Shown here: one piece after another, positions 13,955 through 64,000 of the stretch
How positions within the stretch are numbered: the first letter of the stretch is position 1
How the letters are laid out: each line of letters opens with the position of its first letter
Assembly: GCF_006345805.1 (NCBI RefSeq)
Contig: NC_043023.1
Location: forward strand, 13,268,001 to 13,332,000
Length of the DNA: 64,000 bases
DNA from: Octopus sinensis
Taxonomy: Eukaryota
Direction of reading: 5' to 3'
Notes under the pieces: generated by a model
Database searches by the model: none
What the model was told of the DNA's origin: nothing
Seen by the model: the letters and a program-made list of their open reading frames with translations, nothing else
Made by a program: the position numbers and the translations under genes

Positions 13955-14085
13955 ATTAATCTATTCCCTTATTTTCCCTGAGTATCGCAAACTCTGGGAC
14001 GTCCCAGACATAGCTACAACATTTTCCCCAATAATAATAATAATGTATATGACATGAGACGTTTTCCTTGCGTTAACGTTTGTTG

Positions 14086-15356: not shown

Positions 15357-15997
15357 TAAGCAATAATAAATCTCTGAACGAGTCGCTACGTTCTGAGTTC
15401 AAATTCCGCCGAGGTCAACTTTGCCTTTCATCCTTTCGGGGTCGATAAATTAAGTACCACTTACGCAGTGGGGTCGATGTAATCGACTTTATCCGTTTGT
15501 CTGTCCTTGTTTAGCCCCTTGTAGGTAATAAAGAAATAGGTATAAACAGTATTCTTCTGCGTTACGTTGTGAGTTCAAATTCCGCCGAGGTCGACTTTGC
15601 CTTTCATCCTTTCGGGGTCGATAAATTAAGTACCACTTACGCAGTGAGGTCGATGTAATCGACTTAATCCGTTTGTCTGTCCTTGTTTGTCCCCTCTGCG
15701 TGTAGCCCCTTGTGTGTAATAAAGAAATAGGTATAAACAGTATGCTTAGCGGTATTTCGTCTGCCGCTACGTTCTGAGTTCAAATTCCGCCGATGTCGAC
15801 TTTGCCTTTCATCCTTTCGGGGTCGATAAATTAAGTACCAGTTACGCACTGGAGTCGATGTAATCGACTTGATCCGTTTGTCTGTCCTTGTTTATCCCCT
15901 CTGTGTTTAGCCCCTTGTGGGTAGTAAAGAAATAGGTATAAACAGTAACTGCACGACAATGTGAGGTATACTTGCCATATTGAGATGGCAAGTATAC
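15357..15997 (+). mobile_element. Fragment of element J interrupted by a SINE family C array (15383-15934)
   Basis: aataataaatctctgaacgag and (g)taaacagtaac match 61976-62012; ends in a perfect 13-bp hairpin 15966-15997. Confidence 0.6.
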
Positions 15998-16717: not shown

Positions 16718-16930
16718 CCCACCTATGTCGTTTCAATTCTGCCATAAGATCATATCCCTCCTCATTCAGAAAACATTGTTAGTTCTCCCCCTTCATTATA
16801 TTTTCTCGTTATTTTCAGTTTATAGATATACATAACATTCTCCCCCTCAAACGAAGAAAGTTGATCGCAGTAAAAACTTTCCTATTTACAATGACAAATT
16901 ATGAGAACTGCATAAGGGATAAAAAAAATT

Positions 16931-19900
16931 GGATCTTTTCGGTTTGACCGGCAGTTTTTAAAAAATAATTTCCACGTAACTAAACACTTTAAAACTTCGT
17001 ATACTGGTAGAATGTGTTTATAAGACATCTTTTTCTCTTGGCTTTATTGAGAAAATTCTATAGTTTGTAAGATATTTGGGTCTTTTCGGTTTGACCGGCA
17101 GTTTTTAAAAAATAATTTCCACGTAACTAAACACTTTAAAACTTCGTATACTGGTAGAATGTGTTTATAAAACATCTTTTTCTCTTGGCTTTATTGGAAA
17201 AATTCTATAGTTTGTAAGATATTTGGGTCTTTTCGGTTTGACCGGCAGTTTTTTTAAAATAATTTCCACGTAACTAAACACTTTTAAACTTCGTATACTG
17301 GTAGAATGTGTTTATAAAACATCTTTTTCTCTTGGCTTTATTGAGAAAATTCTATAGTTTGTAAGATATTTGGGTCTTTTCGGTTTGACCGGCAGTTTTT
17401 AAAAATAATTTCCACGTAACTAAACACTTTTAAACTTCGTATACTGGTAGAATGTGTTTATAAAACATCTTTTTCTCTTGGCTTTATTGAGAAAATTCTA
17501 TAGTTTGTAAGATATTTGGGTCTTTTCGGTTTGACCGGCAGTTTTTTAAAAAATAATTTCCACGTAACTAAACACTTTAAAACTTCGTATACTGGTAGAA
17601 TGTGTTTATAAGACATCTTTTTCTCTTGGCTTTATTGAGAAAATTCTATAGTTTGTAAGATATTTGGGTCTTTTCGGTTTGACCGGCAGTTTTTAAAAAA
17701 TAATTTCCACGTAACTAAACACTTTAAAACTTCGTATACTGGTAGAATGTGTTTATAAGACATCTTTTTCTCTTGGCTTTATTGAGAAAATTCTATAGTT
17801 TGTAAGATATTTGGGTCTTTTCGGTTTGACCGGCAGTTTTTAAAAAATAATTTCCACGTAACTAAACACTTTAAAACTTCGTATACTGGTAGAATGTGTT
17901 TATAAGACATCTTTTTCTCTTGGCTTTATTGAGAAAATTCTATAGTTTGTAAGATATTTGGGTCTTTTCGGTTTGACCGGCAGTTTTTAAAAAATAATTT
18001 CCACGTAACTAAACACTTTAAAACTTCGTATACTGGTAGAATGTGTTTATAAGACATCTTTTTCTCTTGGCTTTATTGAGAAAATTCTATAGTTTGTAAG
18101 ATATTTGGGTCTTTTCGGTTTGACCGGCAGTTTTTAAAAAATAATTTCCACGTAACTAAACACTTTAAAACTTCGTATACTGGTAGAATGTGTTTATAAA
18201 ACATCTTTTTCTCTTGGCTTTATTGAGAAAATTCTATAGTTTGTAAGATATTTGGGTCTTTTCGGTTTGACCGGCAGTTTTTAAAAAATAATTTCCACGT
18301 AACTAAACACTTTAAAACTTCGTATACTGGTAGAATGTGTTTATAAAACATCTTTTTCTCTTGGCTTTATTGAGAAAATTCTATAGTTTGTAAGATATTT
18401 GGGTCTTTTCGGTTTGACCGGCAGTTTTTAAAAAATAATTTCCACGTAACTAAACACTTTAAAACTTCGTATACTGGTAGAATGTGTTTATAAAACATCT
18501 TTTTCTCTTGGCTTTATTGGAAAAATTCTATAGTTTGTAAGATATTTGGGTCTTTTCGGTTTGACCGGCAGTTTTTTTAAAAATAATTTCCACGTAACTA
18601 AACACTTTTAAACTTCGTATACTGGTAGAATGTGTTATAAAACATCTTTTTCTCTTGGCTTTATTGAGAAAATTCTATAGTTTGTAAGATATTTGGGTCT
18701 TTTCGGTTTGACCGGCAGTTTTTAAAAAATAATTTCCACGTAACTAAACACTTTTTAAACTTCGTATACTGGTAGAATGTGTTTATAAAACATCTTTTTC
18801 TCTTGGCTTTATTGAGAAAATTCTATAGTTTGTAAGATATTTGGGTCTTTTCGGTTTGACCGGCAGTTTTTAAAAAATAATTTCCACGTAACTAAACACT
18901 TTTAAAACTTCGTATACTGGTAGAATGTGTTTATAAGACATCTTTTTCTCTTGGCTTTATTGAGAAAATTCTATAGTTTGTAAGATATTTGGGTCTTTTC
19001 GGTTTGACCGGCAGTTTTTAAAAAAATATTTCCACGTAACTAAACACTTTAAAACTTCGTATACTGGTAGAATGTGTTTATAAAACATCTTTTTCTCTTG
19101 GCTTTATTGAGAAAATTCTATAGTTTGTAAGATATTTGGGTCTTTTCGGTTTGACCGGCAGTTTTAAAAAATAATTTCCACGTAACTAAACACTTTAAAA
19201 CTTCGTATACTGGTAGAATGTGTTTATAAAACATCTTTTTCTTGGCTTTATTGAGAAAATTCTATAGTTTGTAAGATATTTGGGTCTTTTCGGTTTGACC
19301 GGCAGTTTTTTAAAAAATAATTTCCACGTAACTAAACACTTTTAAACTTCGTATACTGGTAGAATGTGTTTATAAAACATCTTTTTCTCTTGGCTTTATT
19401 GGAAAAATTCTATAGTTTGTAAGATATTTGGGTCTTTTCGGTTTGACCGGCAGTTTTTTTAAAATAATTTCCACGTAACTAAACACTTTTAAACTTCGTA
19501 TACTGGTAGAATGTGTTTATAAAACATCTTCTTCTCTTGGCTTTATTGAGAAAATTCTATAGTTTGTAAGATATTTGGGTCTTTTCGGTTTGACCGGCAG
19601 TTTTTAAAAATAATTTCCACGTAACTAAACACTTTTTAACTTCGTATACTGGTAGATGTGTTTTATAAAACATCTTTTTCTCTTGGCTTTATTGAGAAAA
19701 TTCTATAGTTTGTAAGATATTTGGGTCTTTTCGGTTTGACCGGCAGTTTTTAAAAAATAATTTCCACGTAACTAAACACTTTAAAACTTCGTATACTGTG
19801 TAGAATGTGTTTATAAGACATCTTTTTCTCTTGGCTTTATTGAGAAAATTCTATAGTTTGTAAGATATTGGGTCTTTTCGGTTTGACCGGCAGTTTTAAA

Positions 19901-22900
19901 AAATAATTTCCACGTAACTAAACACTTTAAAACTTCGTATACTGGTAGAATGTGTTTATAAGACATCTTTTTCTCTTGGCTTTATTGAGAAAATTCTATA
20001 GTTTGTAAGATATTTGGGTCTTTTCGGTTTGACCGGCAGTTTTAAAAAATAATTTCCACGTAACTAAACACTTTTAAACTTCGTATACTGGTAGAATGTG
20101 TTTATAAGACATCTTTTTCTCTTGGCTTTATTGAGAAAATTCTATAGTTTGTAAGATATTTGGGTCTTTTCGGTTTGACCGGCAGTTTTTAAAAAATAAT
20201 TTCCACGTAACTAACACTTTTAAAACTTCGTATACTGGTAGAATGTGTTTATAAGACATCTTTTTCTCTCTTGGCTTTATTGAGAAAATTCTATAGTTTG
20301 TAAGATATTTTGGTCTTTTCGGTTTGACCGCAGTTTTTTAAAAAAATATTTCCACGTAACTAAACACTTTAAAACTTCGTATACTGGTAGAATGTGTTTA
20401 TAAAACATCTTTTTCTCTTGGCTTTATTGAGAAAATTCTATAGTTTGTAAGATATTTGGGTCTTTTCGGTTTGACCGGCAGTTTTTAAAAAATAATTTCC
20501 ACGTAACTAAACACTTTAAAACTCGTATACTGGTAGAATGTGTTTATAAGACATCTTTTTCTCTTGGCTTTATTGAGAAAATTCTATAGTTTGTAAGATA
20601 TTTGGGTCTTTTCGGTTTGACCGGCAGTTTTTAAAAATAATTTCCACGTAACTAAACACTTTAAAACTTCGTATACTGGTAGAATGTGTTTATAAAACAT
20701 CTTTTTTCTCTTGGCTTTATTGAGAAAATTCTATAGTTTGTAAGATATTTGGGTCTTTTCGGTTTGACCGGCAGTTTTTAAAAAATAATTTCCACGTAAC
20801 TAAACACTTTAAAACTTCGTATACTGGTAGAATGTGTTTATAAGACATCTTTTTCTCTTGGCTTATTGAGAAAATTCTATAGTTTGTAAGATATTTGGGT
20901 CTTTTCGGTTTGACCGGCAGTTTTTAAAAATAATTTCCACGTAACTAAACACTTTAAAACTTCGTATACTGGTAGAATGTGTTTATAAGACATCTTTTTC
21001 TCTTGGCTTTATTGAGAAAATTCTATAGTTTGTAAGATATTTGGGTCTTTTCGGTTTGACCGGCAGTTTTTAAAAAATAATTTCCACGTAACTAAACACT
21101 TTAAAACTTCGTATACTGGTAGAATGTGTTTATAAGACATCTTTTTCTCTTGGCTTTATTGAGAAAATTCTATAGTTTGTAAGATATTTTGGTCTTTTCG
21201 GTTTGACCGGCAGTTTTTAAAAATAATTTCCACGTAACTAAACACTTTAAAACTTCGTATACTGGTAGAATGTGTTTATAAGACATCTTTTTCTCTTGGC
21301 TTTATTGAGAAAATTCTATAGTTTGTAAGATATTTGGGTCTTTTCGGTTTGACCGGCAGTTTTTAAAAAATAATTTCCACGTAACTAAACACTTTAAAAC
21401 TTCGTATACTGGTAGAATGTGTTTATAAAACATCTTTTTCTCTTGGCTTTATTGGAAAAATTCTATAGTTTGTAAGATATTTGGGTCTTTTCGGTTTGAC
21501 CGGCAGTTTTTTTAAAATAATTTCCACGTAACTAAACACTTTTAAACTTCGTATACTGGTAGAATGTGTTTATAAAACATCTTTTTCTCTCTTGGCTTTA
21601 TTGAGAAAATTCTATAGTTTGTAAGATATTTGGGTCTTTTCGGTTTGACCGGCAGTTTTAAAAAATAATTTCCACGTAACTAAACACTTTTAAACTTCGT
21701 ATACTGGTAGAATGTGTTTATAAAACATCTTTTTCTCTTGGCTTTATGAGAAAATTCTATAGTTTGTAAGATATTTGGGTCTTTTCGGTTTGACCGGCAG
21801 TTTTTAAAAAAATTTCCACGTAACTAAACACTTAAAACTTCGTATACTGGTAGAATGTGTTATAAGACATCTTTTTCTCTTGGCTTTATTGAGAAAATTC
21901 TATAGTTTGTAAGATATTTGGGTCTTTTCGGTTTGACCGGCAGTTTTTAAAAATAATTTCCACGTAACTAAACACTTTAAACTTCGTATACTGGTAGAAT
22001 GTGTTTATAAGACATCTTTTTCTCTTGGCTTTATTGAGAAAATTCTATAGTTTGTAAGATATTTGGGTCTTTTCGGTTTGACCGGCAGTTTTTAAAAAAT
22101 AATTTCCACGTAACTAAACACTTTAAAACTTCGTATACTGGTAGAATGTGTTATAAAACATCTTTTTCTCTTGGCTTTATTGGAAAAATTCTATAGTTTG
22201 TAAGATATTTGGGTCTTTTCGGTTTGACCGGCAGTTTTTAAAAAAATATTTCCACGTAACTAAACACTTTAAAACTTCGTATACTGGTAGAATGTGTTTA
22301 TAAGACATCTTTTTCTCTTGGCTTTATTGAGAAAATTCTATAGTTTGTAAGATATTTGGGTCTTTTCGGTTTGACCGGCAGTTTTTTAAAAAATAATTTC
22401 CACGTAACTAAACACTTTAAAACTTCGTATACTGGTAGAATGTGTTTATAAGACATCTTTTTCTCTTGGCTTTATTGAGAAAATTCTATAGTTTGTAAGA
22501 TATTTGGGTCTTTTCGGTTTGACCGGCAGTTTTTAAAAAATAATTTCCACGTAACTAAACACTTTAAAACTTCGTATACTGGTAGAATGTGTTTATAAGA
22601 CATCTTTTTCTCTGGCTTTATTGAGAAAATTCTATAGTTTGTAAGATATTTGGGTCTTTTCGGTTTGACCGGCAGTTTTTAAAAAAATTTCCACGTAACT
22701 AAACACTTTAAAACTTCGTATACTGGTAGAATGTGTTTATAAGACATCTTTTTCTCTGGCTTTATTGAGAAAATTCTATAGTTTGTAAGATATTGGGTCT
22801 TTTCGGTTTGACCGGCAGTTTTTAAAAAATAATTTCCACGTAACTAAACACTTTAAAACTTCGTATACTGGTAGAATGTGTTTATAAGACATCTTTTTCT

Positions 22901-25900
22901 CTTGGCTTTATTGAGAAAATTCTATAGTTTGTAAGATATTTGGGTCTTTTCGGTTTGACCGGCAGTTTTTAAAAAAATTTCCACGTAACTAAACACTTTA
23001 AAACTTCGTATACTGGTAGAATGTGTTTATAAGACATCTTTTTCTCTTGGCTTTATTGAGAAAATTCTATAGTTTGTAAGATATTTGGGTCTTTTCGGTT
23101 TGACCGGCAGTTTTTAAAAAATAATTTCCACGTACTAAACACTTTAAAACTTCGTATACTGGTAGAATGTGTTTATAAAACATCTTTTTCTCTTGGCTTT
23201 ATTGGAAAAATTCTATAGTTTGTAAGATATTTGGGTCTTTTCGGTTTGACCGGCAGTTTTTTTAAAATAATTTCCACGTAACTAAACACTTTAAACTTCG
23301 TATACTGGTAGAATGTGTTTATAAAACATCTTCTTCTCTTGGCTTTATTGAGAAAATTCTATAGTTTGTAAGATATTGGGTCTTTTCGGTTTGACCGGCA
23401 GTTTTTAAAAATAATTTCCACGTAACTAAACACTTTTAAACTTCGTATACTGGTAGAATGTGTTTATAAAACATCTTTTTCTCTTGGCTTTATTGAGAAA
23501 ATTCTATAGTTTGTAAGATTTTGGGTCTTTTCGGTTTGACCGGCAGTTTTTAAAAAATAATTTCCACGTAACTAAACACTTTAAAACTTCGTATACTGGT
23601 AGAATGTGTTTATAAGACATCTTTTTCTCTTGGCTTTATTGAAAAATTCTATAGTTTGTAAGTTATTTGGGTCTTTTCGGTTTGACCGGCAGTTTTTTAA
23701 AAAATAATTTCCACGTAACTAAACACTTTAAAACTTCGTATACTGGTAGAATGTGTTTATAAGACATCTTTTTCTCTTGGCTTTATTGAGAAAATTCTAT
23801 AGTTTGTAAGATATTTTGGTCTTTTCGGTTTGACCGGCAGTTTTTAAAAAATAATTTCCACGTAACTAAACACTTTAAAACTTCGTATACTGGTAGAATG
23901 TGTTTATAAGACATCTTTTTCTCTTGGCTTTATTGAGAAAATTCTATAGTTTGTAAGATATTTGGGTCTTTTCGGTTTGACCGGCAGTTTTTAAAAAATA
24001 ATTCCACGTAACTAAACACTTTAAAACTTCGTATACTGGTAGAATGTGTTATAAGACATCTTTTTCTCTTGGCTTTATTGAGAAAATTCTATAGTTTGTA
24101 AGATATTTGGGTCTTTTCGGTTTGACCGGCAGTTTTTTAAAAATAATTTCCACGTAACTAAACACTTTAAACTTCGTATACTGGTAGAATGTGTTTATAA
24201 AACATCTTTTTCTCTTGGCTTTATTGAGAAAATTCTATAGTTTGTAAGATATTTGGGTCTTTTCGGTTTGACCGGCAGTTTTTAAAAAAATTTCCACGTA
24301 ACTAAACACTTTAAAACTTCGTATACTGGTAGAATGTGTTTATAAGACATCTTTTTCTCTCTTGGCTTTATTGAGAAAATTCTATAGTTTGTAAGATATT
24401 TGGGTCTTTTCGGTTTGACCGGCAGTTTTTTAAAAATAATTTCCACGTAACTAAACACTTTAAAACTTCGTATACTGGTAGAATGTGTTTATAAAACATC
24501 TTTTTTCTCTTGGCTTTATTGAGAAAATTCTATAGTTTGTAAGATATTTGGGTCTTTTCGGTTTGACCGGCAGTTTTTTAAAAAAAATTTCCACGTAACT
24601 AAACACTTTAAAACTTCGTATACTGGTAGAATGTGTTTATAAGACATCTTTTTCTCTTGGCTTTATTGAGAAAATTCTATAGTTTGTAAGATATTTGGGT
24701 CTTTTCGGTTTGACCGGCAGTTTTTAAAAATAATTTCCACGTAACTAAACACTTTAAAACTTCGTATACTGGTAGAATGTTTATAAGACATCTTTTTCTC
24801 TTGGCTTTATTGAGAAAATTCTATAGTTTGTAAGATATTTGGGTCTTTTCGGTTTGACCGGCAGTTTTTAAAAAATAATTTCCACGTAACTAAACACTTT
24901 AAAACTTCGTATACTGGTAGAATGTGTTTATAAAACATCTTTTTCTCTTGGCTTTATTGAGAAAATTCTATAGTTTGTAAGATATTTTGGTCTTTTCGGT
25001 TTGACCGGCAGTTTTTAAAAAATAATTTCCACGTAACTAAACACTTTAAAACTTCGTATACTGGTAGAATGTGTTTATAAGACATCTTTTTCTCTTGGCT
25101 TTATTGAGAAAATTCTATAGTTTGTAAGATATTTGGGTCTTTTCGGTTTGACCGGCAGTTTTTAAAAAATAATTTCCACGTAACTAAACACTTTAAAACT
25201 TCGTATACTGGTAGAATGTGTTTATAAAACATCTTTTTCTCTTGGCTTTATTGAGAAAATTCTATAGTTTGTAAGATATTTGGGTCTTTTCGGTTTGACC
25301 GGCAGTTTTTTAAAAAATAATTTCCACGTAACTAAACACTTTTAAACTTCGTATACTGGTAGAATGTGTTTATAAGACATCTTTTTCTCTTGGCTTTATT
25401 GAGAAAATTCTATAGTTTGTAAGATATTTGGGTCTTTTCGGTTTGACCGGCAGTTTTTTAAAAAATAATTTCCACGTAACTAAACACTTTAAAACTTCGT
25501 ATACTGGTAGAATGTGTTTATAGACATCTTTTTCTCTTGGCTTTATTGAGAAAATTCTATAGTTTGTAAGATATTTGGGTCTTTTCGGTTTGACCGGCAG
25601 TTTTTAAAAAATAATTTCCACGTAACTAAACACTTTAAACTTCGTATACTGGTAGAATGTGTTTATAAAACATCTTCTTCTCTTGGCTTTATTGAGAAAA
25701 TTCTATAGTTTGTAAGATATTTGGGTCTTTTCGGTTTGACCGGCAGTTTTTAAAAATAATTTCCACGTAACTAAACACTTTTTAAACTTCGTATACTGGT
25801 AGAATGTGTTTATAAAACATCTTTTTCTCTTGGCTTTATTGAGAAAATTCTATAGTTTGTAAGATATTTGGGTCTTTTCGGTTTGACCGGCAGTTTTTAA

Positions 25901-28811
25901 AAAATAATTTCCACGTAACTAAACACTTTAAAACTTCGTATACTGGTAGAATGTGTTTATAAGACATCTTTTTCTCTTGGCTTTATTGAGAAAATTCTAT
26001 AGTTTGTAAGATATTTGGGTCTTTTCGGTTTGACCGGCAGTTTTTAAAAAATAATTTCCACGTAACTAAACACTTTAAAACTTCGTATACTGGTAGAATG
26101 TGTTTATAAGACATCTTTTTCTCTTGGCTTTATTGAGAAAATTCTATAGTTTGTAAGATATTTGGGTCTTTTCGGTTTGACCGGCAGTTTTTAAAAAATA
26201 ATTTCCACGTAACTAAACACTTTAAAACTTCGTATACTGGTAGAATGTGTTTATAAAACATCTTTTTCTCTTGGCTTTATTGGAAAAATTCTATAGTTTG
26301 TAAGATATTTGGGTCTTTTCGGTTTGACCGGCAGTTTTTAAAAATAATTTCCACGTAACTAAACACTTTAAAACTTCGTATACTGGTAGAATGTGTTTAT
26401 AAGACATCTTTTTCTCTTGGCTTTATTGAGAAAATTCTATAGTTTGTAAGATATTTGGGTCTTTTCGGTTTGACCGGCAGTTTTTTAAAATAATTTCCAC
26501 GTAACTAAACACTTTAAAACTTCGTATACTGGTAGAATGTGTTTATAAAACATCTTCTTCTCTTGGCTTTATTGAGAAAATTCTATAGTTTGTAAGATAT
26601 TTGGGTCTTTTCGGTTTGACCGGCAGTTTTTAAAAATAATTTCCACGTAACTAAACACTTTTTAAACTTCGTATACTGGTAGAATGTGTTTATAAAACAT
26701 CTTTTTCTCTTGGCTTTATTGAGAAAATTCTATAGTTTGTAAGATATTTGGGTCTTTTCGGTTTGACCGGCAGTTTTTTTAAAATAATTTCCACGTAACT
26801 AAACACTTTTAAAACTTCGTATACTGGTAGAATGTGTTTATAAAACATCTTTTTCTCTTGGCTTTATTGAGAAAATTCTATAGTTTGTAAGATATTTGGG
26901 TCTTTTCGGTTTGACCGGCAGTTTTTTAAAAAATAATTTCCACGTAACTAAACACTTTTAAACTTCGTATACTGGTAGAATGTGTTTATAAAACATCTTT
27001 TTCTCTTGGCTTTATTGGAAAAATTCTATAGTTTGTAAGATATTTGGGTCTTTTCGGTTTGACCGGCAGTTTTTTTAAAAATAATTTCCACGTAACTAAA
27101 CACTTTTAAACTTCGTATACTGGTAGAATGTGTTTATAAAACATCTTCTTCTCTTGGCTTTATTGAGAAAATTCTATAGTTTGTAAGATATTTGGGTCTT
27201 TTCGGTTTGACCGGCAGTTTTTAAAAAATAATTTCCACGTAACTAAACACTTTAAAACTTCGTATACTGGTAGAATGTGTTTATAAAACATCTTTTTCTC
27301 TTGGCTTTATTGAGAAAATTCTATAGTTTGTAAGATATTTGGGTCTTTTCGGTTTGACCGGCAGTTTTTAAAAATAATTTCCACGTAACTAAACACTTTA
27401 AAACTTCGTATACTGGTAGAATGTGTTTATAAAACATCTTTTTCTCTTGGCTTTATTGAGAAAATTCTATAGTTTGTAAGATATTTGGGTCTTTTCGGTT
27501 TGACCGGCAGTTTTTAAAAAATAATTTCCACGTAACTAAACACTTTTAAAACTTCGTATACTGGTAGAATGTGTTTATAAAACATCTTTTTTCTCTTGCT
27601 TTATTGAGAAAATTCTATAGTTTGTAAGATATTTGGGTCTTTTCGGTTTGACCGGCAGTTTTTTAAAAAATAATTTCCACGTAACTAAAACTTTAAAACT
27701 TCGTATACTGGTAGAATGTGTTTATAAAACATCTTTTTCTCTTGGCTTTATTGGAAAAATTCTATAGTTTGTAAGATATTTGGGTCTTTTCGGTTGACCG
27801 GCAGTTTTTTTAAAAATAATTTCCACGTAACTAAACACTTTTAAACTTCGTATACTGGTAGAATGTGTTTATAAAACATCTTCTTCTCTTGGCTTTATTG
27901 AGAAAATTGTATAGTTTGTAAGATATTTGGGTCTTTTCGGTTTGACCGGCAGTTTTTAAAAATAATTTCCACGTAACTAAACACTTTTAAACTTCGTATA
28001 CTGGTAGAATGTGTTTATAAAACATCTTTTTCTCTTGGCTTTATTGAGAAAATTCTATAGTTTGTAAGATATTTGGGTCTTTTCGGTTTGACCGGCAGTT
28101 TTTTAAAAAATAATTTCCACGTAACTAAACACTTTAAAACTTCGTATACTGGTAGAATGTGTTTATAAAACATCTTTTTCTCTTGGCTTTATTGAGAAAA
28201 TTCTATAGTTTGTAAGATATTTGGGTCTTTTCGGTTTGACCGGCAGTTTTTTAAAAAATAATTTCCACGTAACTAAACACTTTAAAACTTCGTATACTGG
28301 TAGAATGTGTTTATAAAACATCTTTTTCTCTTGGCTTTATTGGAAAAATTCTATAGTTTGTAAGATATTTGGGTCTTTTCGGTTTGACCGGCAGTTTTTT
28401 TTAAAATAATTTCCACGTAACTAAACACTTTTAAACTTCGTATACTGGTAGAATGTGTTTATAAAACATCTTCTTCTCTTGGCTTTATTGAGAAACTTCT
28501 ATAGTTTGTAAGATATTTTGGTCTTTTCGGTTTGACCGGCAGTTTTTTAAAATAATTTCCACGTAACTAAACACTTTTTAAACTTCGTATACTGGTAGAA
28601 TGTGTTTATAAAACATCTTTTTCTCTTGGCTTTATTGAGAAAATTCTATAGTTTGTAAGATATTTGGGTCTTTTCGGTTTGACCGGCAGTTTTTTAAAAT
28701 AATTTCCACGTAACTAAACACTTTTAAACTTCGTATACTGGTAGAATGTGTTTATAAAACATCTTTTTCTCTTGGCTTTATTGAGAAAATTCTATAGTTT
28801 GTAAGATATTT
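16931..28811. repeat. Satellite array, 147-bp monomer, ~81 copies
   Basis: Monomer gggtcttttcggtttgaccggcag...gtttgtaagatattt counted as 147 nt; period checked (17081 to 17228); 11881/147 is about 81. Confidence 0.97.
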
Positions 28812-28952
28812 GTTGGTCCTTTTCGTCAATTTCTGCAATTTCAACCAATCAATGACGTCTATTGAGGTAAAAAAAAACATTCTGTGCCGTATGAAAATGT
28901 CCCTCGTTTAAGAAACAGATTGGGTTTATTTACATTTGTGAAGAAAAAAATA

Positions 28953-29525
28953 TACCTATTTCTTTACTACCCACAAGGGGCTAAACACAGACAAACGGAT
29001 TAAGTCGATTACATCAACCCCTGTGCGTAACTAGTACTTAATTAATCGACCCCGAAAGGATGAAAGGCAAAGTCGACCTCGGCGGAATTTGAACTCAGAA
29101 CGTAACGGTAGACGAAATACCTATTTCTATTTCTTTATTACCCACAAGGGGCTAAACACAGAGGGGACAAACAAAGACAGACATAGGTATTAAGTCGATT
29201 ACATCGACCTGAGTGCATAACTGGTACTTAATTTATCGACCCCGAAAGGATGAAAGGCAAAGTCGACCTCGGCGGAATTTGAACTCAGAACGTAACGCAG
29301 ACGAAATACCGCTAAGCATTTCGCCCGGCGTGCTAACGTTTCTGCCAGCTCGCCGCCTTCTTAAAGGGATTAAGTCGATTACATCGACCCCAGTGCGAAA
29401 CTGGTACTTTATTTATCGACCCCGAGGCAGAGTCGACCTCGGCGGAATTTGAACTCAGAACGTAACAGCAGACGAAATACGGCTACGCATTTCACCCGGC
29501 GTGCTCACGTTTCTGCCAGCTCGCA
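28953..29525 (-). mobile_element. SINE family C multimer inserted in element E
   Basis: 3-4 partial units, reverse complement of 13423-13954. Confidence 0.85.
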
Positions 29526-29739
29526 CCGTTCCCCCCACCTCTAACCCTAAAACAGATTGAAATGCAATAGATCGATTCTAGGGTCATAATTATGGGTGAC
29601 AATTTCATTTGACACCGCTAGAAAAAACTGCCGTTCAAACCGAAAAGATCCGAATGGAGGACTATGAAACGGAATAAAGAAGCAGTCACCTATTTCTTTA
29701 CTACCCACAAGGGGCTAAAATAGAGAAGCAGTCACCGTT

Positions 29740-30830: not shown

Positions 30831-31039
30831 GGTTTCAAATTTTGGCCGGGGACCAGCATTATTTGAGGCGAGGGGGAAGTCGATTACAGGTAACCCAATT
30901 TTCTGTTGCTTCCTATTTCAACGATGTTGAAAGGATGATGGACAAATTCGACCTCGTTGGCTTTTGAACTTGCATATCTAAGATGGGCATTTTTGGATTA
31001 TGTGAGTCCTTCGTAGTTACAGTAATTATGTAGAAGTTA

Positions 31040-31610
31040 GGTACTATTTAAGAAGAGTGGTCCCGGTGCGCGCAGTCGCGTACTTGCGCATCTGCGCTAG
31101 CTAGTCGTGACTAGTCGATCCTACAACGATTACCTAGCAAAGTAAATAAAACACAAAATAAATAATTGGATCTTTTCCTTTTGAACGGCAGTTTGTAACA
31201 TAATTTCTAGGTAACTAAAAAATTTTAAACTTCGTATTCTGGTAAAATGTGTTTATAAAACATCTTTTTATCTTGGCTTTATTGAGAAAATTATGTTACA
31301 AACTGCTGTTCAAAAGGAAAAGATTCCGTTTTTGTACACGCGTAACAATTAAATTAATTTAACAATTAAGAAAAAAAAATTTAGGGTTAGGGTTAGGTTG
31401 AGGGTTAGTGACAGGATGTTGTCTCAGTTTTAGACGCAGTAAATGATTTTAGTTGAATGGAGGTAATCGATTGGTTAAAATTGCCAAAATGCTCGGATTT
31501 TCAGACGAAATATCTTACAAACTATAGAATTTTCTCAATAAAACCAAGAGAAAATGATGTTTTATAAACACATTCTACCAGTATACGAAGTTTAAAAGTT
31601 TTTCTTAATT
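31040..31610. mobile_element. Family F arm plus family E variant fragments carrying TTAGGG-like repeats
   Basis: ggtactat..ggtcccggtgcgcgc at 31040; ggatcttttccttt TIR at 31168; ttagggttagggttagg at 31381. Confidence 0.7.
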
Positions 31611-39394: not shown

Positions 39395-40010
39395 GGATCT
39401 TTTCCTTTTGAACGGCAGTTTTCAACACAATTTCTAGTTAACTAAACACTTTAAAACTTCGTATACTGGTAGAATGTGTCAAAATAAGACATTTTTTTCT
39501 CTTGGCTTTCTTGAGAAAATTGTAATAATGTTTGTTTAATGTAGTTTAATTTTTCAAATTTTAACCAATCCTATGCTCTCTTTTGAGCTAAAATCATTTG
39601 CTGTGTCTAAAACTGAGACAACACCCTGTAACTAACCCTAAACCTCCCCCCTAACCCTAACCCTAAATTTTTTTTTCCTTAATTGTTACGCGTGTAAAAA
39701 AAACTAAAGCAATGAAATTAAATTAATTTAACAATTAAGAAAAAATAATTTAGGTTTAGGGTTAGTTACAGGATGTTGTCTCAGTTTTAGACGCAGCAAA
39801 TGATTTCAGTTGAATGGAGGTAATCGATTGGTTAAAATTGCAAAAAATGCTCGGATTTTCAGACGAAATATCTTACAAACTAGAATTTTCTCAATAAAAC
39901 CAAGAGAAAATGATGTTTTATTTTGACACATTCTACCAGTATACGAAGTTTAAAAGTGTTTAGTTACCTAGAAATTGTGTTGACATCTGCCGTTCAAAAG
40001 GAAAAGATCT
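39395..40010. mobile_element. Family E variant with (CTAACC)n core
   Basis: TIRs ggatctttttccttttgaacggcag / ctgccgttcaaaaggaaaagatct; imperfect 8-bp flanks gaactcgg / gcactcag. Confidence 0.75.
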
Positions 40011-40233
40011 GCACTCAGTTGGCTGAATGCTACACGAGGCAGTGTAAGCACAGCAGATCCTGGGACCTGGCTGAACGGGCTGATTGTTTACGTTTGCTGT
40101 GCTGTTAATTTAATATCATCTTACTATTACTCCAGCTTCCCAAATATGGGATCTTTACGGTTTGAACGGCAGATTTTTTCTAGCAGTGTCATATGAAATT
40201 GTCACCCATAATTATGACCCTACTGTCGATCTA

Positions 40234-43200
40234 GTTAGTTAGTTAATTTGGCTCAAAAGGAAATAGCAAGGCCATGGAGTTAAGTACAGGGTGGTGTTCA
40301 TGTAAAGAGTTCAGGCCACTTGAGGTCAAGGGAGGCTTTGAACAAAGCGGTCGTCGGCATCTTCACCATCTCGTCTGGCAGCTTGTTCCACGGATCCGCA
40401 ACCCGGATGGAGAAAGCTCCTGTCCTTCGATTGAGATGAAATCATCGCAGGTAGAGCTTTTCGGAATGACCCCCGCAGCCGACGCTCTGGAGCAGGAGTG
40501 AAGAACAGCTCTTTTAAGAGGTTACACTTTCCGCTTATGATGCTGTGGGCGAGAATGAGATCACCACGGCGGCGGCGTTTTTCAAGAGAATAAAGGTCGA
40601 GCGTCCTGAGCCTTTCTTCATAGGACAAATTTTTGAGACCATGAACCATGCGGGTAGCCAGCTTCTGGACTCTTTCGAGATGCTGTATGTCTTTGAGGAG
40701 ATAAGGAGAAGAGGCTTGAATCCCGTACTCCAATATGGGTCTCACCAGCGTGACATAGAGTGGTAGGAATATGGCTGCTGTAAGCATTCCAAATGACCAT
40801 CGAATCAAGAACAGAATTCCGTGTGCTTTGTTGGCAGCATGGACGCACTGGGCCGAAGGCGAAAAGGAGGAATCCACCAAGATACCCAGGTCCTTTACCT
40901 GATCGGTCCTCTCCAGCAGCAGACAACCCGGCTCGAAATCAAGTTGAGTTGCAGGAGGAGAGCCAACAGGCAGATGACAGCACTTTGACACGTTCAGACA
41001 CAGGTCCCATTCGTTAGACCACTTCCAAATTTGGTGGAGGCATCGACGAAGATCCTCTATATCACCGCGGGGAGCGACCAATTTGATATCGTCGGCAAAT
41101 AGAAGGGTGTGTTGCGTGAGGTCGTCGGGCAAGTCATTTATGAAGACTAAGAACAATAAGGGCCCAAGCACTGAACCTTGAGGCACGCCACTGCTCGCAC
41201 TGGAGACGTCGGACCGCGAACCATTAACTTGGACTTGGAAGGAGTGATCTGAGAGGAAGGCACCAACCCAACGTACAATATCTGGATGGAAACTATATGC
41301 TTGAAGCTTGACAAGTAATAGGCGGTGGTTTACCGAGTCAAAAGCTTTGGCAAAGTCCAATAAAACGATGTCAACAGCATCACTATCATCGAGGATGCGC
41401 GTCACTAATTCTTCCATTACCAGTAAGTTGGTCAAGCATGATCTCTTCGGCACGAAGCCGTGTTGGGAATCAGAGATAGAGGCTGTGTTTTGGAGGTGGA
41501 GCATCATACTTTTCTTAAGGATGGTTTCGAACATCTTGCTGATTATTGATGTAAGGGAAACCGGTCGGTAGTTAAGCGGGTCTTCGCGGCTCCCTTTCTT
41601 GAAAATTGGGCAGATTATCGCTGTTCTCCAGTCCGCAGGTATAACACCCGTCGCCAATGACATATTGAATAGACGTGTTAAGGGCTCGCAGATGACCGGA
41701 GCCAACGCTTTGATAACCCATGGGTGTATGCCGTCAGGGCCATGACCCTTGTTGACATCGAGGCCTTGAATAACACGTTTGACTTCGTCCCGCGTGATGA
41801 CTAATCTAGGCATTGGAGGTACCGATCTATCAAATGGAGGGTGTTCACGACCATCATCTTGTTTGAAAATAGTTGAAAAAGCCTCGGCAAATAATTGACT
41901 CTGTTGATAAGGGTCCTCAATCGATACGCCTGTTGAGTCTACCAACGTTGCAATCTGGTTGTTCAAGTGGGAATTCCGTTGGACATGGGCAAAGAAGGTT
42001 TTTGGATTGCTACTGGCATTGGCCGCGATTTTGTATTCATAACTGAAGCGTTCTTCCTTTTCAATTTTCACGGCTCGGTCTCGTTGAGTTTTGTACACCT
42101 CAAAAGCTGCAGTCGAATCCAGATTTTAGAATTCAGCCCAAGCAATATCTCTGAGTCGACGTTCTCGTTTAACCTTCTTCGTCACCCAGGGCTTGTGTTT
42201 CTTCTTATTGGGAAACCCAACGGGAACTGCCTGGTCAGTCAACCAGATTACATATGCTTTGAGGGATGACCATAGTTCGTCAACTGAGGACAACGTCATC
42301 AGGGATCGCCAGTCCAGAAGCGCGGAAGCCTCGGTTAGAATTTCAAGATTAATTGCAGAGAAGACTCTACGTGGCAGCGAAGTAGTCGTGGGCGTAGAAA
42401 AAGTTGTGTGCATGACGAACTTCAGGACCGCATGATCACTCTTGGCAAGAGGGGCGCACACAGATACGTCTGACACTGATCTTGGATAGCGGGAGAATAC
42501 CAGATCCAGCATAGATGGCTGCTGCCCAGACCGATGCCTTGTCGGATATTCAACATGTTGCGATAGAAAACAATCTTCAGCCACGTCAAGAAGGGCCTGG
42601 CCGAACCGGGAAGATGTACAAATTGATGCGGGCCAATCGATCGTGGGAGCGTTGAAGTCTCCTAGTACCAAACAGTCATGCGGAGCTGAAACGAATCTTA
42701 TCGCTTCGAGTAAATGAGCATCGTCCTGGGGGTCGGCAAGAGGCGGCCTGTAGACAGCTAACACGGGCAGGCAAAACTCGGATAGGCTCAGCTTGCAATA
42801 GACGGCATCGAATTTTGTTGTAGGTTGAGCATTAGTGGGTAGAATACCGCTGGACGGTTTGTGCTCAGATTTGACATACACAGCAACACCTCCACCTCGC
42901 CTTTTTTCTCTGTCACATCTGAAAAGGACGTAGCCCTGTAGGTGGATTTCTGAGTCCTTTACTTCTGGAGTCAGCCAAGTCTTGGTGATAGCTATCACAT
43001 CAGGGGAGTCATGTATGGCCAGTGTAAATAGTTCGCTGAACTTTGGGAATAAGGAGCACGAGTTGGTATAGACGATGCTGAGCTGTGAAGTTTGAGGGGC
43101 GGGAGTTGGGGAACAAGCAGAATAAGGGGTATCAGAGATAGCATCGTTGACGGGGGTATCAACTTCACTTCGATTTGCCCTCACTTCACTTTCCCTGTCA

Positions 43201-43310
43201 GTACTACAGCATGCGACCAGAGGTAGGACTTGATTATTTGTCCATCTTGGATGCGTAAACCCTTCTCTACCATCTGTTTCCTCATCTTTAGTTCGGATAT
43301 TAGGTTTCTC
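40234..43310 (-). mobile_element. CR1-like LINE ORF2 (APE endonuclease + reverse transcriptase), 5'-truncated and inactivated
   Basis: EN motifs (GGGVAVYVK, GDFNAP, LDLVFS, SDH) and RT motifs (GVPQGSVLGP, LFADD); ORFs 42126-43328 and 40326-42098 are in one frame split by one TAA; (taac)n tail; 7-bp TSD cgatcta at 40227-40233 and 43311-43317 inside a family E copy. Confidence 0.93.
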
Positions 43311-44019
43311 CGATCTATTGCATTTCAATCTGTTTTAGGGTTAAGGTTAGGGGGAAGAGCATCTTTTTTTCTTCACAAATGTAAATAAACCCAATCTGTT
43401 TCTTAAACGAGGGACATATTCATACGGCACAGAATTTTTTCACCTTAATAGACGTCATTGGTTGGTTGAAATTGAAGAAAAAAAACAACAACTGGATCTT
43501 TTCGGTTTGAACGGCATTTTTTCTAGCGGTGTCATATGAAATTGTCACCCATAATTATGACCCTAGTATCAATCTATTGCATTTCAATCTGTTTTGGGGT
43601 TAGGGGTGGAGTGAAGGGTATCGTTTTTTCCTTCAGAATGTTTTTACCTCAATAGATGTCATTGATTGGTTGAAATTGTCACCCATAATTATGACCCTAG
43701 TATCGATCTACTGCATTTCAATCTGTTTTAGGGTTAGGGGTGGAGGGAAGGGTATCGTTTTTTTCTTCAGAAATGTAAATAAACCCAATCTGTTTCTTAA
43801 ACGAGGAACATATTCATACGGCACAGAATGTTTTTTACCTCAATAGATGTCATTGATTGGTTGAAATTGAAGAAAAAACAACAACGAATATCTTACAAAC
43901 TATAGACTTTTCTCAATAAAGCCAAGAGAAAAAGATGTTTTATAAACACATTCTACCAGTATACGAAGTTTAAAAGTGGAAATTATTTTAAAAATCTGCC
44001 GGTCAAACCGAAAACATCC
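43311..44019 (-). mobile_element. Family E copies with partial tandem duplication
   Basis: Reverse complement of 51544-52321 segments; TIR at 43494 and end at 44019. Confidence 0.8.
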
Positions 44020-47322: not shown

Positions 47323-47353
<31 letters not shown>

Positions 47354-47356
47354 CAT

Positions 47357-51543: not shown

Positions 51544-52321
51544 GGATCTTTTCGGTTTGAATGGCAGTTTTTAAAAATAATTTCCACTTAACTAAAAAAT
51601 TTTAAACTTCGTATACTGGTAGAATGTGTTTATAAAACATCTTTTTCTCTTGGCTTTATTGAGAAAATTCTATAGTTTGTAAGATATTTGTTGTTTTTTT
51701 TCTTCAATTTCTGCAATTTCAACCAGTCAATGACGTCTATTGAGGTAAAAAAAAACATTCTGTGCCGTATGAATATGTCCCTCGTTTAAGAAACAGATTG
51801 GGTTCATTTACATTTGTGAAGAAAAAAAGATACCCTTCCCCCTAACCCTAAAACAGATTGAAATGTAATAGATCGATACTAGGGTCATAATTATGGGTGA
51901 CAATTTCAACCAATCAATGACATCTATTGAGGTGAAAACATTCTGTGCCGTATGAATATGTTCCTCGTTTAAGAAACAGATTGGGTTTATTTACATTTGT
52001 GAAGAAAAAAAGATACTCTTCCCCCTAACCCTAAAACAGATTGAAATGTAATAGATCGATACTAGGGTCATAATTATGGGTGACAATTTCAACCAAACAA
52101 TGACGTCTATTGAGGTGAAAACATTCTGTGCTGTATGAATATGTCCCTCGTTTAAGAAACAGATTGGGTTTATTTACATTTGTGAAGAAAAAAAGATACT
52201 CTTCCCCCTAACCCTAACCGTAAAACATTGAAATGCAATAGATCGATACTAGGGTCATAATTATGGGTGACAATTTCATATGACACTGCTAGAAAAAATG
52301 CCGTTCAAACCGAAAAGATCT
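51544..52321 (+). mobile_element. Complete family E element with internal ~185-bp triplication
   Basis: Both TIRs present; caatttcaac at 51714, 51901, 52084; imperfect 8-bp flanks gaatccag / gaacccag. Confidence 0.88.
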
Positions 52322-61664: not shown

Positions 61665-62235
61665 GTAAAGTATACTAGCCATCTCAAGATGGCTAACCAC
61701 TAAGGGTGAGTGTTACTGTAGCTTTTAGCCCCAGGAGATCATCGTCTCCAGCTGGCTTTAGGCACCCTTTCTGTGCCCTTATGATACTTGAAAAGGGAGG
61801 TTATCCCTCTCTCGTAAACCTAAGTGATACGCATGGACTGCAGTTTCGAGGTATTTGCCTCTTGTCAACGTACGGTAATCACCGGTTTTCGATAAAGAGA
61901 GACCTGTTTGCAAATATCTATTTAATGTTTTTCCCAGTAACCACTGTCACTGATTTCGAAAAACTGTCTGAAAGCAATAATAAATCTCTGAACGAGATGT
62001 AAACAGTAACCGCTCGAAAATGTAAAGTATACTAGCCATCTCAATATGGCTAACCACTAAGGGTGGGTGTTACTGCAATCCGTGCGTATCACTTAGGTTT
62101 ACAAGAGAGGGGATGACCTCTCTTTGCAAATACCATAAGGGCACAGAAAGTGTGCCTAAAGCCAGCTGGAGACGATGATCTCTTGGGGCTAAAAGCTACA
62201 GTAACACCCACCATTAGTGGTTGGCCATATTGAGA
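61665..62235. mobile_element. Element J: ~160-bp inverted repeats plus an internal direct copy of the left end
   Basis: 61682-61843 inverted at 62073-62235; 61665-61718 repeated directly at 62022-62075. Confidence 0.7.
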
Positions 62236-62967
62236 GGGACATATTCATACGGCACAGAATGTTTTCACCTCAATAGACGTCAGTAATTGGTTGAAATTGC
62301 AGAAATTGAAGAAAAAAAACAACAAATATCTTACAAACTGTAGAATTTTCTCAATAAAGCCAAGAGAAAAAGATGTTTTATAAACACATTCTACCAGTAT
62401 ACGAAGTTTAAAAGTGTTTAGTTACGTGGAAATTATTTAAAAAAAACTGCCGGTCAAACCGAAAGGTCCTATTTCTTAAATGAGGGACATATTCATATGG
62501 TACAGAATGTTTTTTACCTCAATAGACGTCACTGATTGGTTGAAATTGCAGAAATTGAAGAAAAAAAAACAACAAATATCTTACAAACTATAGAATTTTT
62601 CTCAATAAAGCCAAGAGAAAAAGATGTTTTATAAACACATTCTACCAGTATACGAAGTTTAAAAATATTTAGTTACGTGGAAATTATTTTAAAAGACTGC
62701 CGGTCAAACCGAAAGGTCCTATTTCTTAAATGAGGGACATATTCATATGGTACATAATGTTTTTTACCTCAATAGATGTCATTGATTGGTTGAAATTGCA
62801 GAAATTGAAGAAAAAAAACCAACAAATATCTTACAAACTATAGAATTTTCTCAATAAAGCCAAGAGAAAAAGATGTTTTATAAACACATTCTACCAGTAT
62901 ACGAAGTTTAAAATTTTTTAGTTACCTAGAAATTATGTTAAAAATGCCGTTCAAACCAAAAAGATCC
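62234..62967 (-). repeat. Family E terminus in 3 tandem ~250-bp units
   Basis: gagggacat at 62234, 62482, 62732; TIR end aagatcc at 62967. Confidence 0.88.
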
Positions 62968-63879: not shown

Positions 63880-64000
63880 TTATGAAATTGTCACCCATAA
63901 TTATGACCCTAGTATCGATCTATTGCATTTCAATCTATTTTAGGGTTAGGGGTGGGGGGAAGGGTATCTTTTTTTCTTCAGAAATGTAAATAAACCCAAT
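63880..64000 (-). mobile_element. Family E fragment running off the window
   Basis: Matches 43530-43800. Confidence 0.8.

What the first reader, a model, noticed from the sequence alone, without database searches (positions are those of the whole stretch)
16931..29651. A 12-kb, 147-bp satellite caught being born inside one TIR element
The monomer is the first 147 bp of family E. The array starts at the left TIR (ggatc), and after ~81 units the sequence runs into the E interior (28812) and ends at the right TIR (29651). An unexpanded parent sits at 51544-52321. Each monomer carries a left-TIR copy, so the array is ~80 tandem potential transposase sites. The monomer equals the nucleosome core length and carries several A/T tracts. 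TE-borne satellites are known in bivalves; whether this family is described in cephalopods I cannot check.
Basis: partly seen in the sequence, partly recalled or inferred. Interest (0 to 1): 0.85.

Follow-up and report, generated by a model that had tools for sequence, protein, structure and literature searches.

The report
Transposon-end tandem array, 81 copies
The first 147 bases of a small non-coding transposon have been copied head-to-tail 81 times inside one copy of that transposon, a clean local example of a known way in which mobile DNA turns into satellite-like DNA.

Summary
TRF finds a 147-bp array of 81.0 copies at 16929-28812. It starts on a genuine element end (GGATC, 16931), runs into the element interior at 28812, and ends at the right inverted repeat (29651).

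The monomer is the left-terminal module of a non-coding TIR family with at least 8 further copies or fragments in the window. A relative at 39395-40010 is a full foldback whose outer arm is this module. The direction is therefore transposon to array, not satellite capture.

The array is young: about 2% pairwise divergence, against 5-7% between dispersed copies, and all 324 CpGs are intact. Its variant pattern fits repeated unequal exchange.

The family duplicates readily. It also holds a 183-bp internal repeat flanked by an 8-bp direct repeat, and a 250-bp repeat that also starts at the terminus.

- The "parent" is a 4.8%-diverged paralogue.
- 80 of 81 monomers carry a mutated terminus (GGGTC or TGGTC).
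- The array-bearing copy has no target-site duplication.
- The nucleosome-length argument is unsupported.

This is a new member of a known kind (Tetris/TIR-220, Xstir, miDNA4). Genome-wide status, read support and host species could not be tested.

The parts
16931..28812 (+). Tandem array of 81 monomers (consensus 147 bp, 29% G+C). Each monomer is the left-terminal module 'A' of element family E, including the 28-29-nt TIR.
   Evidence: TRF; monomer split and alignment; divergence and variant pattern; CpG status.
16931..17077 (+). Monomer 1, the only one with the genuine element terminus GGATC. It marks the left end of the element.
28813..28825 (+). Distal junction patch TTGGTCCTTTTCG. It is 12/13-14 identical to a monomer start, whereas four other E copies read TTGTTTTTTTTTCT here. 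It looks like a partial 82nd monomer, a conversion tract, or the direct repeat that seeded the duplication.
   Evidence: Alignment; match counts and rough probability of about 0.003.
28826..28956 (+). Interior module B of the array-bearing element. It carries the proximal CAATTTCA direct repeat at 28836.
28957..29528 (-). Secondary insertion of a SINE-like unit in about 3 tandem copies (period about 184), at the B/C boundary.
   Evidence: (hits to the 52503-52621 repeat).
29529..29622 (+). Interior module C (contains CCCTAA-like motif), plus the distal CAATTTCA at 29600.
29623..29651 (-). Right terminal inverted repeat, with 0 mismatches to the TIR core.
51544..52321 (+). Unexpanded paralogue of E: one A module, then B, then a 183-bp internal tandem repeat x3 (51714-52278), then the right TIR. 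TIR is 28 nt at 93% complementarity. The 8-bp TSD is GAATCCAG/GAACCCAG.
   Evidence: paralogous empty site at about 30880-30905.
39395..40010 (+). E2 relative, a 616-nt full-length foldback. Its outer arms (129 nt, 92% complementary) are the same module as the array monomer. The 8-bp TSD is GAACTCGG/GCACTCAG.
   Evidence: (dG -203 kcal/mol, z -26.6).
31168..31603 (+). Second E2-type copy: A module, then an inverted 35-nt TIR copy (to 31325), then interior, then the inverted A arm cut off by a (TA)n tract.
43494..44019 (-). E copy 'Ea' (A-B-C-B-C-R). Its right terminus abuts the B-start of the next copy with only 2 nt between them.
40149..43491 (-). E copy 'Eb', which lacks the A module (B-C at 43491-43311, C-R at 40233-40149). 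It is split by a CR1-like LINE at 40234-43310.
62234..62967 (-). E copy with a 250-bp tandem repeat x3 (A plus about 103 bp of B). The unit again starts at the left terminus. The inner units start GGACC, and the copy is truncated at 62234.
63881..64000 (-). Fragment of a further E copy running off the window.

Best explanation
Element family. The region holds a non-coding TIR transposon family. Its ends read GGATC, its TIR is 28-29 nt, and it makes an 8-bp target duplication. It is related to a foldback element whose long arms are the same 147-bp module.

Origin of the array. In one copy the left-terminal 147-bp module was duplicated in place. The duplication ran between two short imperfect direct repeats. 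One is the flank-plus-terminus sequence TT|GGATCTTTTCGG. The other is the T-rich start of the interior, now reading TTGGTCCTTTTCG. The mechanism would be replication slippage or a microhomology-mediated unequal exchange. The resulting dimer then grew to 81 copies by repeated unequal sister-chromatid exchange and gene conversion.

Stability and function. The internal copies carry a mutated terminus (GGTC instead of GATC). This probably makes them uncuttable by the transposase and so lets the array persist. The array is most likely a neutral by-product with no cellular function.

Shown: the structure, the homology, the direction (transposon to array), the relative youth, block-wise variant patterns, and a clean microhomology signature for the family's 183-bp repeat.

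Inferred: the mechanism of the first duplication, the role of the mutated terminus, and neutrality.
For: - Array geometry and boundaries.
- The module is single-copy at the ends of at least 6 other family members and forms both arms of the foldback relative. It is therefore native to the transposon.
- Relative age: monomers differ by 2.05% pairwise and about 1.3% from the consensus. There are only 24 private substitutions in 11.9 kb, and all 4 CpGs are intact in 81/81 monomers. Dispersed copies differ by 4.8-6.9%.
- Unequal exchange: variant G96 (36/81) is clustered (runs test P=0.008) and absent from monomers 66-81. 'GA'-type monomers are followed by the T30/T62 type in 7/10 cases against an 18.5% background (P=5e-4). 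This indicates repeated duplication of multi-monomer blocks.
- Family precedent for microhomology: the 183-bp unit is bounded by CAATTTCA in the unduplicated copy (28836 and 29600). Chimeric junctions GGGTGA-CAATTTCA-ACCAATCA occur in duplicated copies (51901, 52084, 43671).
- The distal junction patch at 28813-28825 is 12 matches to a monomer start against 9 to the ancestral sequence.
- The 250-bp repeat at 62234-62967 also starts where flank plus terminus (GAGAAAGA|GGATC) resembles an internal site (AAGAAACA|GATTGG).
- Literature: microhomology-flanked repeats in MITEs (miDNA4) and expansion inside TEs (Tetris). Persisting DNA-transposon tandems tend to have damaged TIRs because intact TIRs attract breaks.
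Against: - The direct repeat proposed for the first 147-bp duplication is weak in the ancestral sequence (9/14). The better match seen now could be a consequence (conversion) rather than the cause.
- Two independent duplications anchored within a few bases of the same terminus is more than random slippage predicts. It hints at a break at the terminus.
- The array-bearing copy has no TSD (2/8), so an extra rearrangement is needed.
- There is no lag dependence of divergence and no regular higher-order repeat.
- Read support, other genomic arrays and population variation could not be examined.
Confidence: 0.62

Rival explanations
1. Self-insertion (double insertion). A second E copy inserted into the first at the A|B boundary in the same orientation, giving A-[A-B-C-R]-B-C-R. 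Unequal exchange or deletion then left A-A-B-C-R, which expanded.
For: - The repeat unit starts at the element terminus.
- The same nested structure would also yield A-B-C-R-B-C-R. That is what is seen at 44019-40149, where a right terminus is joined to the B-start with 2 nt between them.
- The model is documented for P, hobo and R1, with later expansion of a hobo dimer to 13-19 copies and frequent small deletions at junctions.
Against: - There is no 8-bp target duplication in the junction, which reads ...GATATTTG|GGTC....
- The terminus in the junction is altered.
- The A|B site does not resemble the two known target sites (GAAYYCAG-like).
- For Ea/Eb the expected outer A module beyond 44019 is absent.
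Confidence: 0.12
2. Break-induced origin. Transposase nicked or cut the left terminus, and repair by synthesis-dependent strand annealing re-invaded the sister copy at the terminus, possibly repeatedly. This laid down extra terminal modules, and later growth was by unequal exchange.
For: - Two independent tandem repeats (147 bp and 250 bp) both have one boundary within a few bases of the left terminus. A third rearrangement joins the right terminus to the A|B boundary. By chance this is about (6/780)^2 x 3.
- The family shows many rearranged forms typical of abortive gap repair.
- The missing TSD of the array copy fits an aberrant transposition event.
Against: - There is no transposase gene in the window and no evidence that the family is currently active.
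- Microhomology that includes flank bases explains the anchoring without a break.
- This cannot be told apart from slippage on sequence alone.
Confidence: 0.13
3. Capture. The 147-bp repeat is an older satellite that the E element picked up.
For: Captured tandem repeats are proposed for some MITEs and Helitrons.
Against: - Each monomer contains the element's own TIR.
- The module occurs singly at the ends of dispersed copies and as both arms of the foldback relative.
- The array is younger than the dispersed copies.
- No E-free array is present in the window.
Confidence: 0.03
4. Assembly artefact. The array, or its copy number, was created or inflated by the assembler.
For: - Most length variation lies in homopolymer runs, as expected from long-read error.
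- There are slightly more transversions than transitions among the differences (87 against 70).
Against: - There are 61 distinct monomers and structured shared variants. The longest exact internal repeat is only 510 bp.
- Both junctions read cleanly into unique sequence.
Confidence: 0.07
5. One-step rolling-circle amplification of an excised 147-bp circle, followed by reintegration.
For: Proposed in the literature for some TE-derived arrays.
Against: - A variant at 44% frequency is interspersed in clusters, and dimer-type linkage recurs at 7 places. These require many exchange events rather than one concatemer.
- The array sits exactly in register within its own element.
Confidence: 0.03

Closest known systems
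Tetris foldback transposon and its TIR-220 repeats, Drosophila virilis (Dias et al. 2014, PMC4079207)
   Same: - Non-autonomous, with a foldback-type relative.
- A short-TIR derivative exists (DAIBAM, comparable to E against E2), along with many rearranged forms.
- TSD is 8-10 bp.
- Tandem repeats belonging to the TIR region vary in copy number and expand into kb-size arrays (up to 66 copies) still inside the element.
   Different: - Here the monomer is the outermost 147 bp and includes the terminal TIR itself. In Tetris the repeat is a subterminal TIR domain.
- The expansion is seen on one arm of a short-TIR derivative.
- The sequence is unrelated and the host is different.
- No cytology or abundance data are available.
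Xstir and miDNA4 MITE-satellite systems of Xenopus (as summarised in PMC12628747)
   Same: - MITE, tandem array and composite MITE-plus-array forms coexist.
- For miDNA4, short direct repeats flanking the unit are proposed to drive copy-number change.
   Different: - For miDNA4 the authors propose capture of a pre-existing repeat, whereas here the unit is the element's own end.
- Xstir repeats derive from internal MITE sequence through a stem-loop model.
- The superfamily differs (Tc1/mariner for miDNA4).
hobo, Bari1 and P-related tandem arrays in Drosophila (McGurk & Barbash 2018, PMC5932611)
   Same: - A DNA-transposon end lies at every junction.
- Growth is by unequal exchange.
- Junction TIRs are damaged in arrays that persist.
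   Different: - Those arrays repeat whole or nearly whole elements and often keep an 8-nt TSD in the junction.
- Here only the first 147 bp repeats and no TSD lies in the junction.
Bivalve tandem-repeat-carrying elements (DTC84 MITE of Donax, PMC3879986; Helentron-borne repeats of Crassostrea gigas, PMC7492417)
   Same: A mollusc-type setting of satellite-like repeats carried inside non-autonomous mobile elements.
   Different: - Their repeats are central modules between conserved flanks, and many belong to Helitron/Helentron elements.
- E has a 28-nt TIR and an 8-bp TSD, and the repeat is its terminal module.
- Their arrays inside elements are short.

Membership tests
TE-derived tandem array inside its source element (Tetris/TIR-220 type) | The monomer is homologous to part of a dispersed transposable element. 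| tested here: met
   The array consensus is 93-95% identical to the terminal module of at least 5 dispersed E copies and 88% identical to the E2 arms.
TE-derived tandem array inside its source element (Tetris/TIR-220 type) | The array is still flanked by the remaining parts of the element. | tested here: met
   True left terminus at 16931; interior B/C and right TIR at 28826-29651.
TE-derived tandem array inside its source element (Tetris/TIR-220 type) | Copy number of the module varies among element copies. | tested here: met
   1 copy (51544, 44019, 39395, 31168), 3 copies within 250-bp units (62967), and 81 copies (16931).
Satellite DNA in the classical sense | Long arrays at several loci, appreciable genome fraction, typical chromosomal location. 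| not testable with these tools
   Only one 64-kb window is available. Two metagenome scans and a protein-space search found nothing.
Non-autonomous TIR transposon (MITE-like) | Terminal inverted repeats. | tested here: met
   28 nt at 93% complementarity in the 51544 copy. 11 genuine ends share RGATCTTTTCGGTTTGA.
Non-autonomous TIR transposon (MITE-like) | Target-site duplication of fixed length. | tested here: inconclusive
   8 bp at 7/8 (51544 copy, with a paralogous empty site) and 6/8 (39395 copy). Only 2/8 for the array-bearing copy and 1-4/8 for Ea and Ea+Eb.
Non-autonomous TIR transposon (MITE-like) | No coding capacity; multiple dispersed copies. | tested here: met
   Only short chance ORFs are found. 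At least 8 copies or fragments lie outside the array in 64 kb.
Foldback elements | Long inverted arms making most of the element a hairpin. | tested here: met
   Met for the E2 relative at 39395-40010. Not met for the array-bearing E type, whose TIR is only 28-29 nt.
Merlin superfamily (features as quoted in PMC8101967) | 8- or 9-bp TSD and TIRs with conserved terminal 5'-GG. | tested here: met
   An 8-bp TSD in two copies. 9 of 11 ends start GG and 2 start AG. This is compatible with Merlin but not specific to it.
Merlin superfamily | An autonomous partner encoding a DDE_Tnp_IS1595 transposase with the same TIRs. | not testable with these tools
   No transposase ORF is present in the window, and no access to the rest of the genome.
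hAT superfamily | 8-bp TSD plus short TIRs starting YARNG (the motif is recalled from memory). | tested here: not met
   The TSD length fits, but the ends read GGATC/AGATC and the preceding bases are not conserved.
Helitron/Helentron-borne satellites of bivalves | No TIRs, no TSD, rolling-circle type ends (recalled from memory). | tested here: not met
   E has a 28-nt TIR and an 8-bp TSD.
Nucleosome-positioning satellite | Phased A/T tracts at about 10 bp; unit length under selection. | tested here: inconclusive
   The 10.5-bp AA/TT signal has P of about 0.02 and ranks behind the 6.7-bp and 29-bp peaks. Sister units of 183 and 250 bp argue against length selection. MNase data would be needed.

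The most novel reading that the evidence does not exclude
Terminus-anchored tandem duplication may be a regular product of this transposon's own chemistry. A break at the TIR end would be repaired by re-invasion, so the family seeds satellite arrays at its ends. Only arrays whose internal termini have lost the GATC cleavage site would survive. The surviving array would keep about 80 transposase-binding sites and could act as a sink that titrates the transposase. The whole 12.7-kb unit keeps intact outer ends and could still be moved to seed the repeat elsewhere.
Probability: 0.12. Interest if true: 0.6.

Novelty: new member of a known kind. Interest (0 to 1): 0.35.

Why it matters
It is an unusually legible snapshot of the step from transposon to satellite. 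The source element, a foldback relative, an unexpanded paralogue, two smaller duplications with readable junctions, and an 81-copy array still bounded by both element ends all lie within 64 kb.

If the host is a cephalopod, no TE-derived satellite was found described for that group in the searchable literature.

The locus gives concrete, testable predictions on three points:
- how the first duplication arises (microhomology, self-insertion, or break repair);
- whether damaged termini are needed for array persistence;
- whether such arrays are moved by transposition.

It does not change the general picture, which is already established in Drosophila, Xenopus and bivalves.

Tried and rejected
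- Species distribution through protein space. The recurrent 43-aa array ORF found no candidate. The CR1-like RT (best 53% identity) and a C2H2 zinc-finger ORF (top hits vertebrate) did not identify the organism. All three searches are spent, and the host stays unconfirmed.
- External DNA. Two exact-pattern scans of metagenome contigs, one with the TIR core and one with the most conserved module core, found 0 hits.
- Known RNAs. Rfam and tRNA scans of the window found nothing.
- Higher-order repeat. There is no lag dependence of divergence, only irregular block duplications.
- TSD for the array-bearing copy. None was found at any offset, and flank BLAST found no shared host repeat that would reveal the empty site.
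- Nucleosome reading. The periodicity is weak and sister unit lengths differ, so it was rejected as evidence.
- Satellite capture and one-step rolling circle. Both were rejected on structure and variant pattern.
- Superfamily. hAT was rejected on the termini. Merlin is compatible (GG ends, 8-bp TSD), but Mutator or P cannot be excluded without a transposase.

Full report
**Observation**

Tandem Repeats Finder reports one dominant array at 16929-28812, with period 147, 81.0 copies, 97% matches and 1% indels. The region is AT-rich, at 29% G+C.

Splitting on a conserved anchor gives 81 monomers of 143-149 bp, 35 of them exactly 147. The array starts at GGATCTTTTCGG (16931). The last full monomer ends at 28812 and reads straight into non-repeated sequence. 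That sequence ends with ...CCGAAAAGATCC at 29651, the reverse complement of the array's first bases.

A 23-nt TIR core occurs 89 times in the window with up to 3 mismatches, against 0 expected. Of these, 79 are in the array and 10 are element ends elsewhere.

**The element family**

BLAST of the 51544-52321 copy against the window, and reading of the hits, show a non-coding family, here called E. Its modules are:
- A, 147 bp, starting with the TIR;
- B, about 144 bp;
- C, about 70 bp, with a CCCTAA-like motif;
- R, the right TIR.

Besides the array-bearing copy, the window holds these copies or fragments:

| Coordinates | Strand | Notes |
|---|---|---|
| 51544-52321 | + | Unexpanded copy |
| 43494-44019 | minus | Ea |
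| 40149-40233 plus 43311-43491 | minus | Eb, split by a CR1-like LINE |
| 62234-62967 | minus | 250-bp repeat |
| 63881-64000 | minus | Fragment running off the window |
| 31168-31603 | + | E2 subtype |
| 39395-40010 | + | E2 subtype |

The copy at 39395-40010 is a 616-nt full-length foldback. Its outer arms are 129 nt and 92% complementary, with dG -203 kcal/mol and z -26.6. Those outer arms are the same module as the array monomer.

The 51544 copy has only a 28-nt TIR. Eleven genuine ends read GGATC (9) or AGATC (2).

Two copies have 8-bp target duplications: GAATCCAG/GAACCCAG and GAACTCGG/GCACTCAG. The first is supported by a paralogous empty site near 30880-30905.

No ORF of note lies in the element, and the window has no transposase gene. 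GG ends plus an 8-bp TSD fit the Merlin superfamily as described in PMC8101967. That paper also notes many Merlin sequences in Octopus bimaculoides. Without a transposase this is only a lead.

**Direction of origin**

The module occurs once at the ends of dispersed copies and forms both arms of the foldback relative. Every monomer also contains the element's own TIR. The array is therefore derived from the transposon, not a captured satellite.

Monomers differ from each other by 2.05% in substitutions. There are 61 distinct sequences and only 24 private substitutions in 11.9 kb. All four CpGs are intact in all 81 monomers.

The array consensus differs from the A module of other E copies by 4.8-6.9%, and from E2 by about 12%. 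The B and C-R modules of the array-bearing copy differ from other copies by 3-8%. So the expansion is younger than the dispersal of the family, and the 51544 copy is a paralogue rather than the parent.

If the host is an octopus and the rate quoted in PMC13282606 applies (JC 0.09 for about 25 My), the array coalesces within a few million years. This conversion is conditional on the host identity, which I could not confirm.

**How the array grew**

There is no regular higher-order repeat and no decline of similarity with distance. The variants are nevertheless structured:
- G96 (36/81) is clustered (runs test P=0.008) and missing from the last 16 monomers.
- 'GA'-type monomers are followed by the T30/T62 type in 7 of 10 cases, against an 18.5% background (P=5e-4).

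This is what repeated unequal exchange of one- to few-monomer blocks produces. It argues against a single rolling-circle concatemer. The longest exact repeat inside the array is 510 bp, which speaks against a trivial assembly duplication. Homopolymer-length noise is present, and reads could not be checked.

**How it started**

The family is duplication-prone. An internal 183-bp unit is present once in the array-bearing copy, where it is bounded by CAATTTCA at 28836 and 29600. It is present two to three times in other copies, with chimeric junctions GGGTGA-CAATTTCA-ACCAATCA. This is a textbook slippage or unequal-exchange signature.

The copy at 62234-62967 has three 250-bp units that also begin at the left terminus. 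There, flank plus terminus (GAGAAAGA|GGATC) resembles the internal breakpoint (AAGAAACA|GATTGG).

In the 147-bp array the internal junction reads ...GATATTTG|GGTCTTTTCGG. The distal junction carries a 13-nt patch, TTGGTCCTTTTCG (28813-28825). The patch matches a monomer start at 12 positions. Four other copies read TTGTTTTTTTTTCT at this place (rough chance about 0.003).

I read this as a first duplication between short imperfect direct repeats, one of them straddling flank and terminus. Conversion of the patch after the fact cannot be excluded.

Two alternatives remain open.
- Self-insertion of E at the A|B boundary. This would also explain the Ea/Eb arrangement, where a right terminus abuts a B-start. 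However, the junction lacks a TSD, unlike the hobo and P cases in PMC5932611.
- Repair of a transposase-induced break at the terminus. This would explain why three rearrangements involve a terminus.

**The terminus**

All 80 internal monomers have GGTC where 10 of 11 genuine ends have GATC (GATG in the eleventh). The inner 250-bp units have GACC. These are only two independent events.

They do fit the argument of McGurk and Barbash that tandems with intact TIRs attract breaks, while those with damaged TIRs persist. The array is thus better described as about 80 possible binding sites with disabled cleavage ends. The outermost ends, 16931 and 29651, are intact.

**Open problems**

- The array-bearing copy has no TSD: AAAAAATT against GAATGGAG. 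Either a flanking rearrangement occurred, or the two ends come from different insertions.
- The host species was not identified.
- No external sequence could be recovered.

**Nucleosome idea**

The consensus is 147 bp and has seven A/T runs of at least 4. The 10.5-bp AA/TT signal is weak, with P about 0.02 and third-ranked. The same family makes 183- and 250-bp units. The length is set by where the breakpoints fell, and there is no evidence for selection on it.

**Comparison and novelty**

The closest described case is Tetris/TIR-220 of Drosophila virilis. It is a non-autonomous foldback with a short-TIR derivative, an 8-10-bp TSD, and TIR-associated repeats that expand to arrays of up to 66 copies inside the element.

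Xstir and miDNA4 in Xenopus, hobo and Bari1 arrays in Drosophila, and repeat-carrying MITEs and Helentrons in bivalves are further relatives of the phenomenon.

What is particular here is that the unit is the very end of the element, TIR included. All intermediate forms also sit side by side.

Searches of the held literature found no described cephalopod satellite or foldback family.

Verdict: real, well explained, a new member of a known kind, and of moderate interest.

Noticed in passing
44449-46360: A second, unrelated foldback-type element. Its arms are about 620 bp and 99-100% complementary, and are built of about 156-bp tandem subrepeats with unequal copy number (2.8 against 1.8). This is the classic FB/Tetris architecture and the element looks very young.
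   Followed up: partly
13420-13955, 15384-15947, 28957-29528, 52514-53063: A SINE-like unit of about 184 bp appears at four loci, each time as about 3 tandem copies. One of them sits inside the array-bearing E copy. This suggests a composite trimeric element or a recurrent triplication.
   Followed up: no
40234-43310 (minus): A CR1-like LINE inserted into an E copy. It has an endonuclease ORF at 42126-43328 and an RT ORF at 40326-42098. The flanking E sequence overlaps by about 7 bp. The best database relative is only 53% identical.
   Followed up: partly
43491-43494: The right terminus of one E copy is joined, with 2 nt between, to the start of module B of the next copy, which lacks module A. 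This is the same internal boundary as the array's unit end.
   Followed up: partly
31168-31325: A 158-bp mini-element: module A (125 bp) followed directly by an inverted 35-nt copy of its own TIR, sitting at the left end of an E2 copy.
   Followed up: no
29540-29552, 39645-39665, 39750-39765, 31380-31410, 51845-51860: Two to three units of the telomere-like motif CCCTAA/TTAGGG lie inside the interior of E and E2 copies.
   Followed up: no
7102-8349 (-), 33157-34350 (+), 55889-57288 (+): Three C2H2 zinc-finger arrays (84-bp period). The third is split into two ORFs, probably by a frameshift. E copies are interspersed among them.
   Followed up: no
4511-4861, 54663-54877, 57827-58163, 63562-63720: A 63-bp tandem repeat recurs at four loci in both orientations, next to a 136-bp repeat at 58181-58723. 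This is likely another repeat-carrying element.
   Followed up: no
46924-47938 and 50085-50811: A duplicated block about 3.2 kb apart, with identical short tandem repeats and a 169/183-bp SINE-like tandem in both copies.
   Followed up: no
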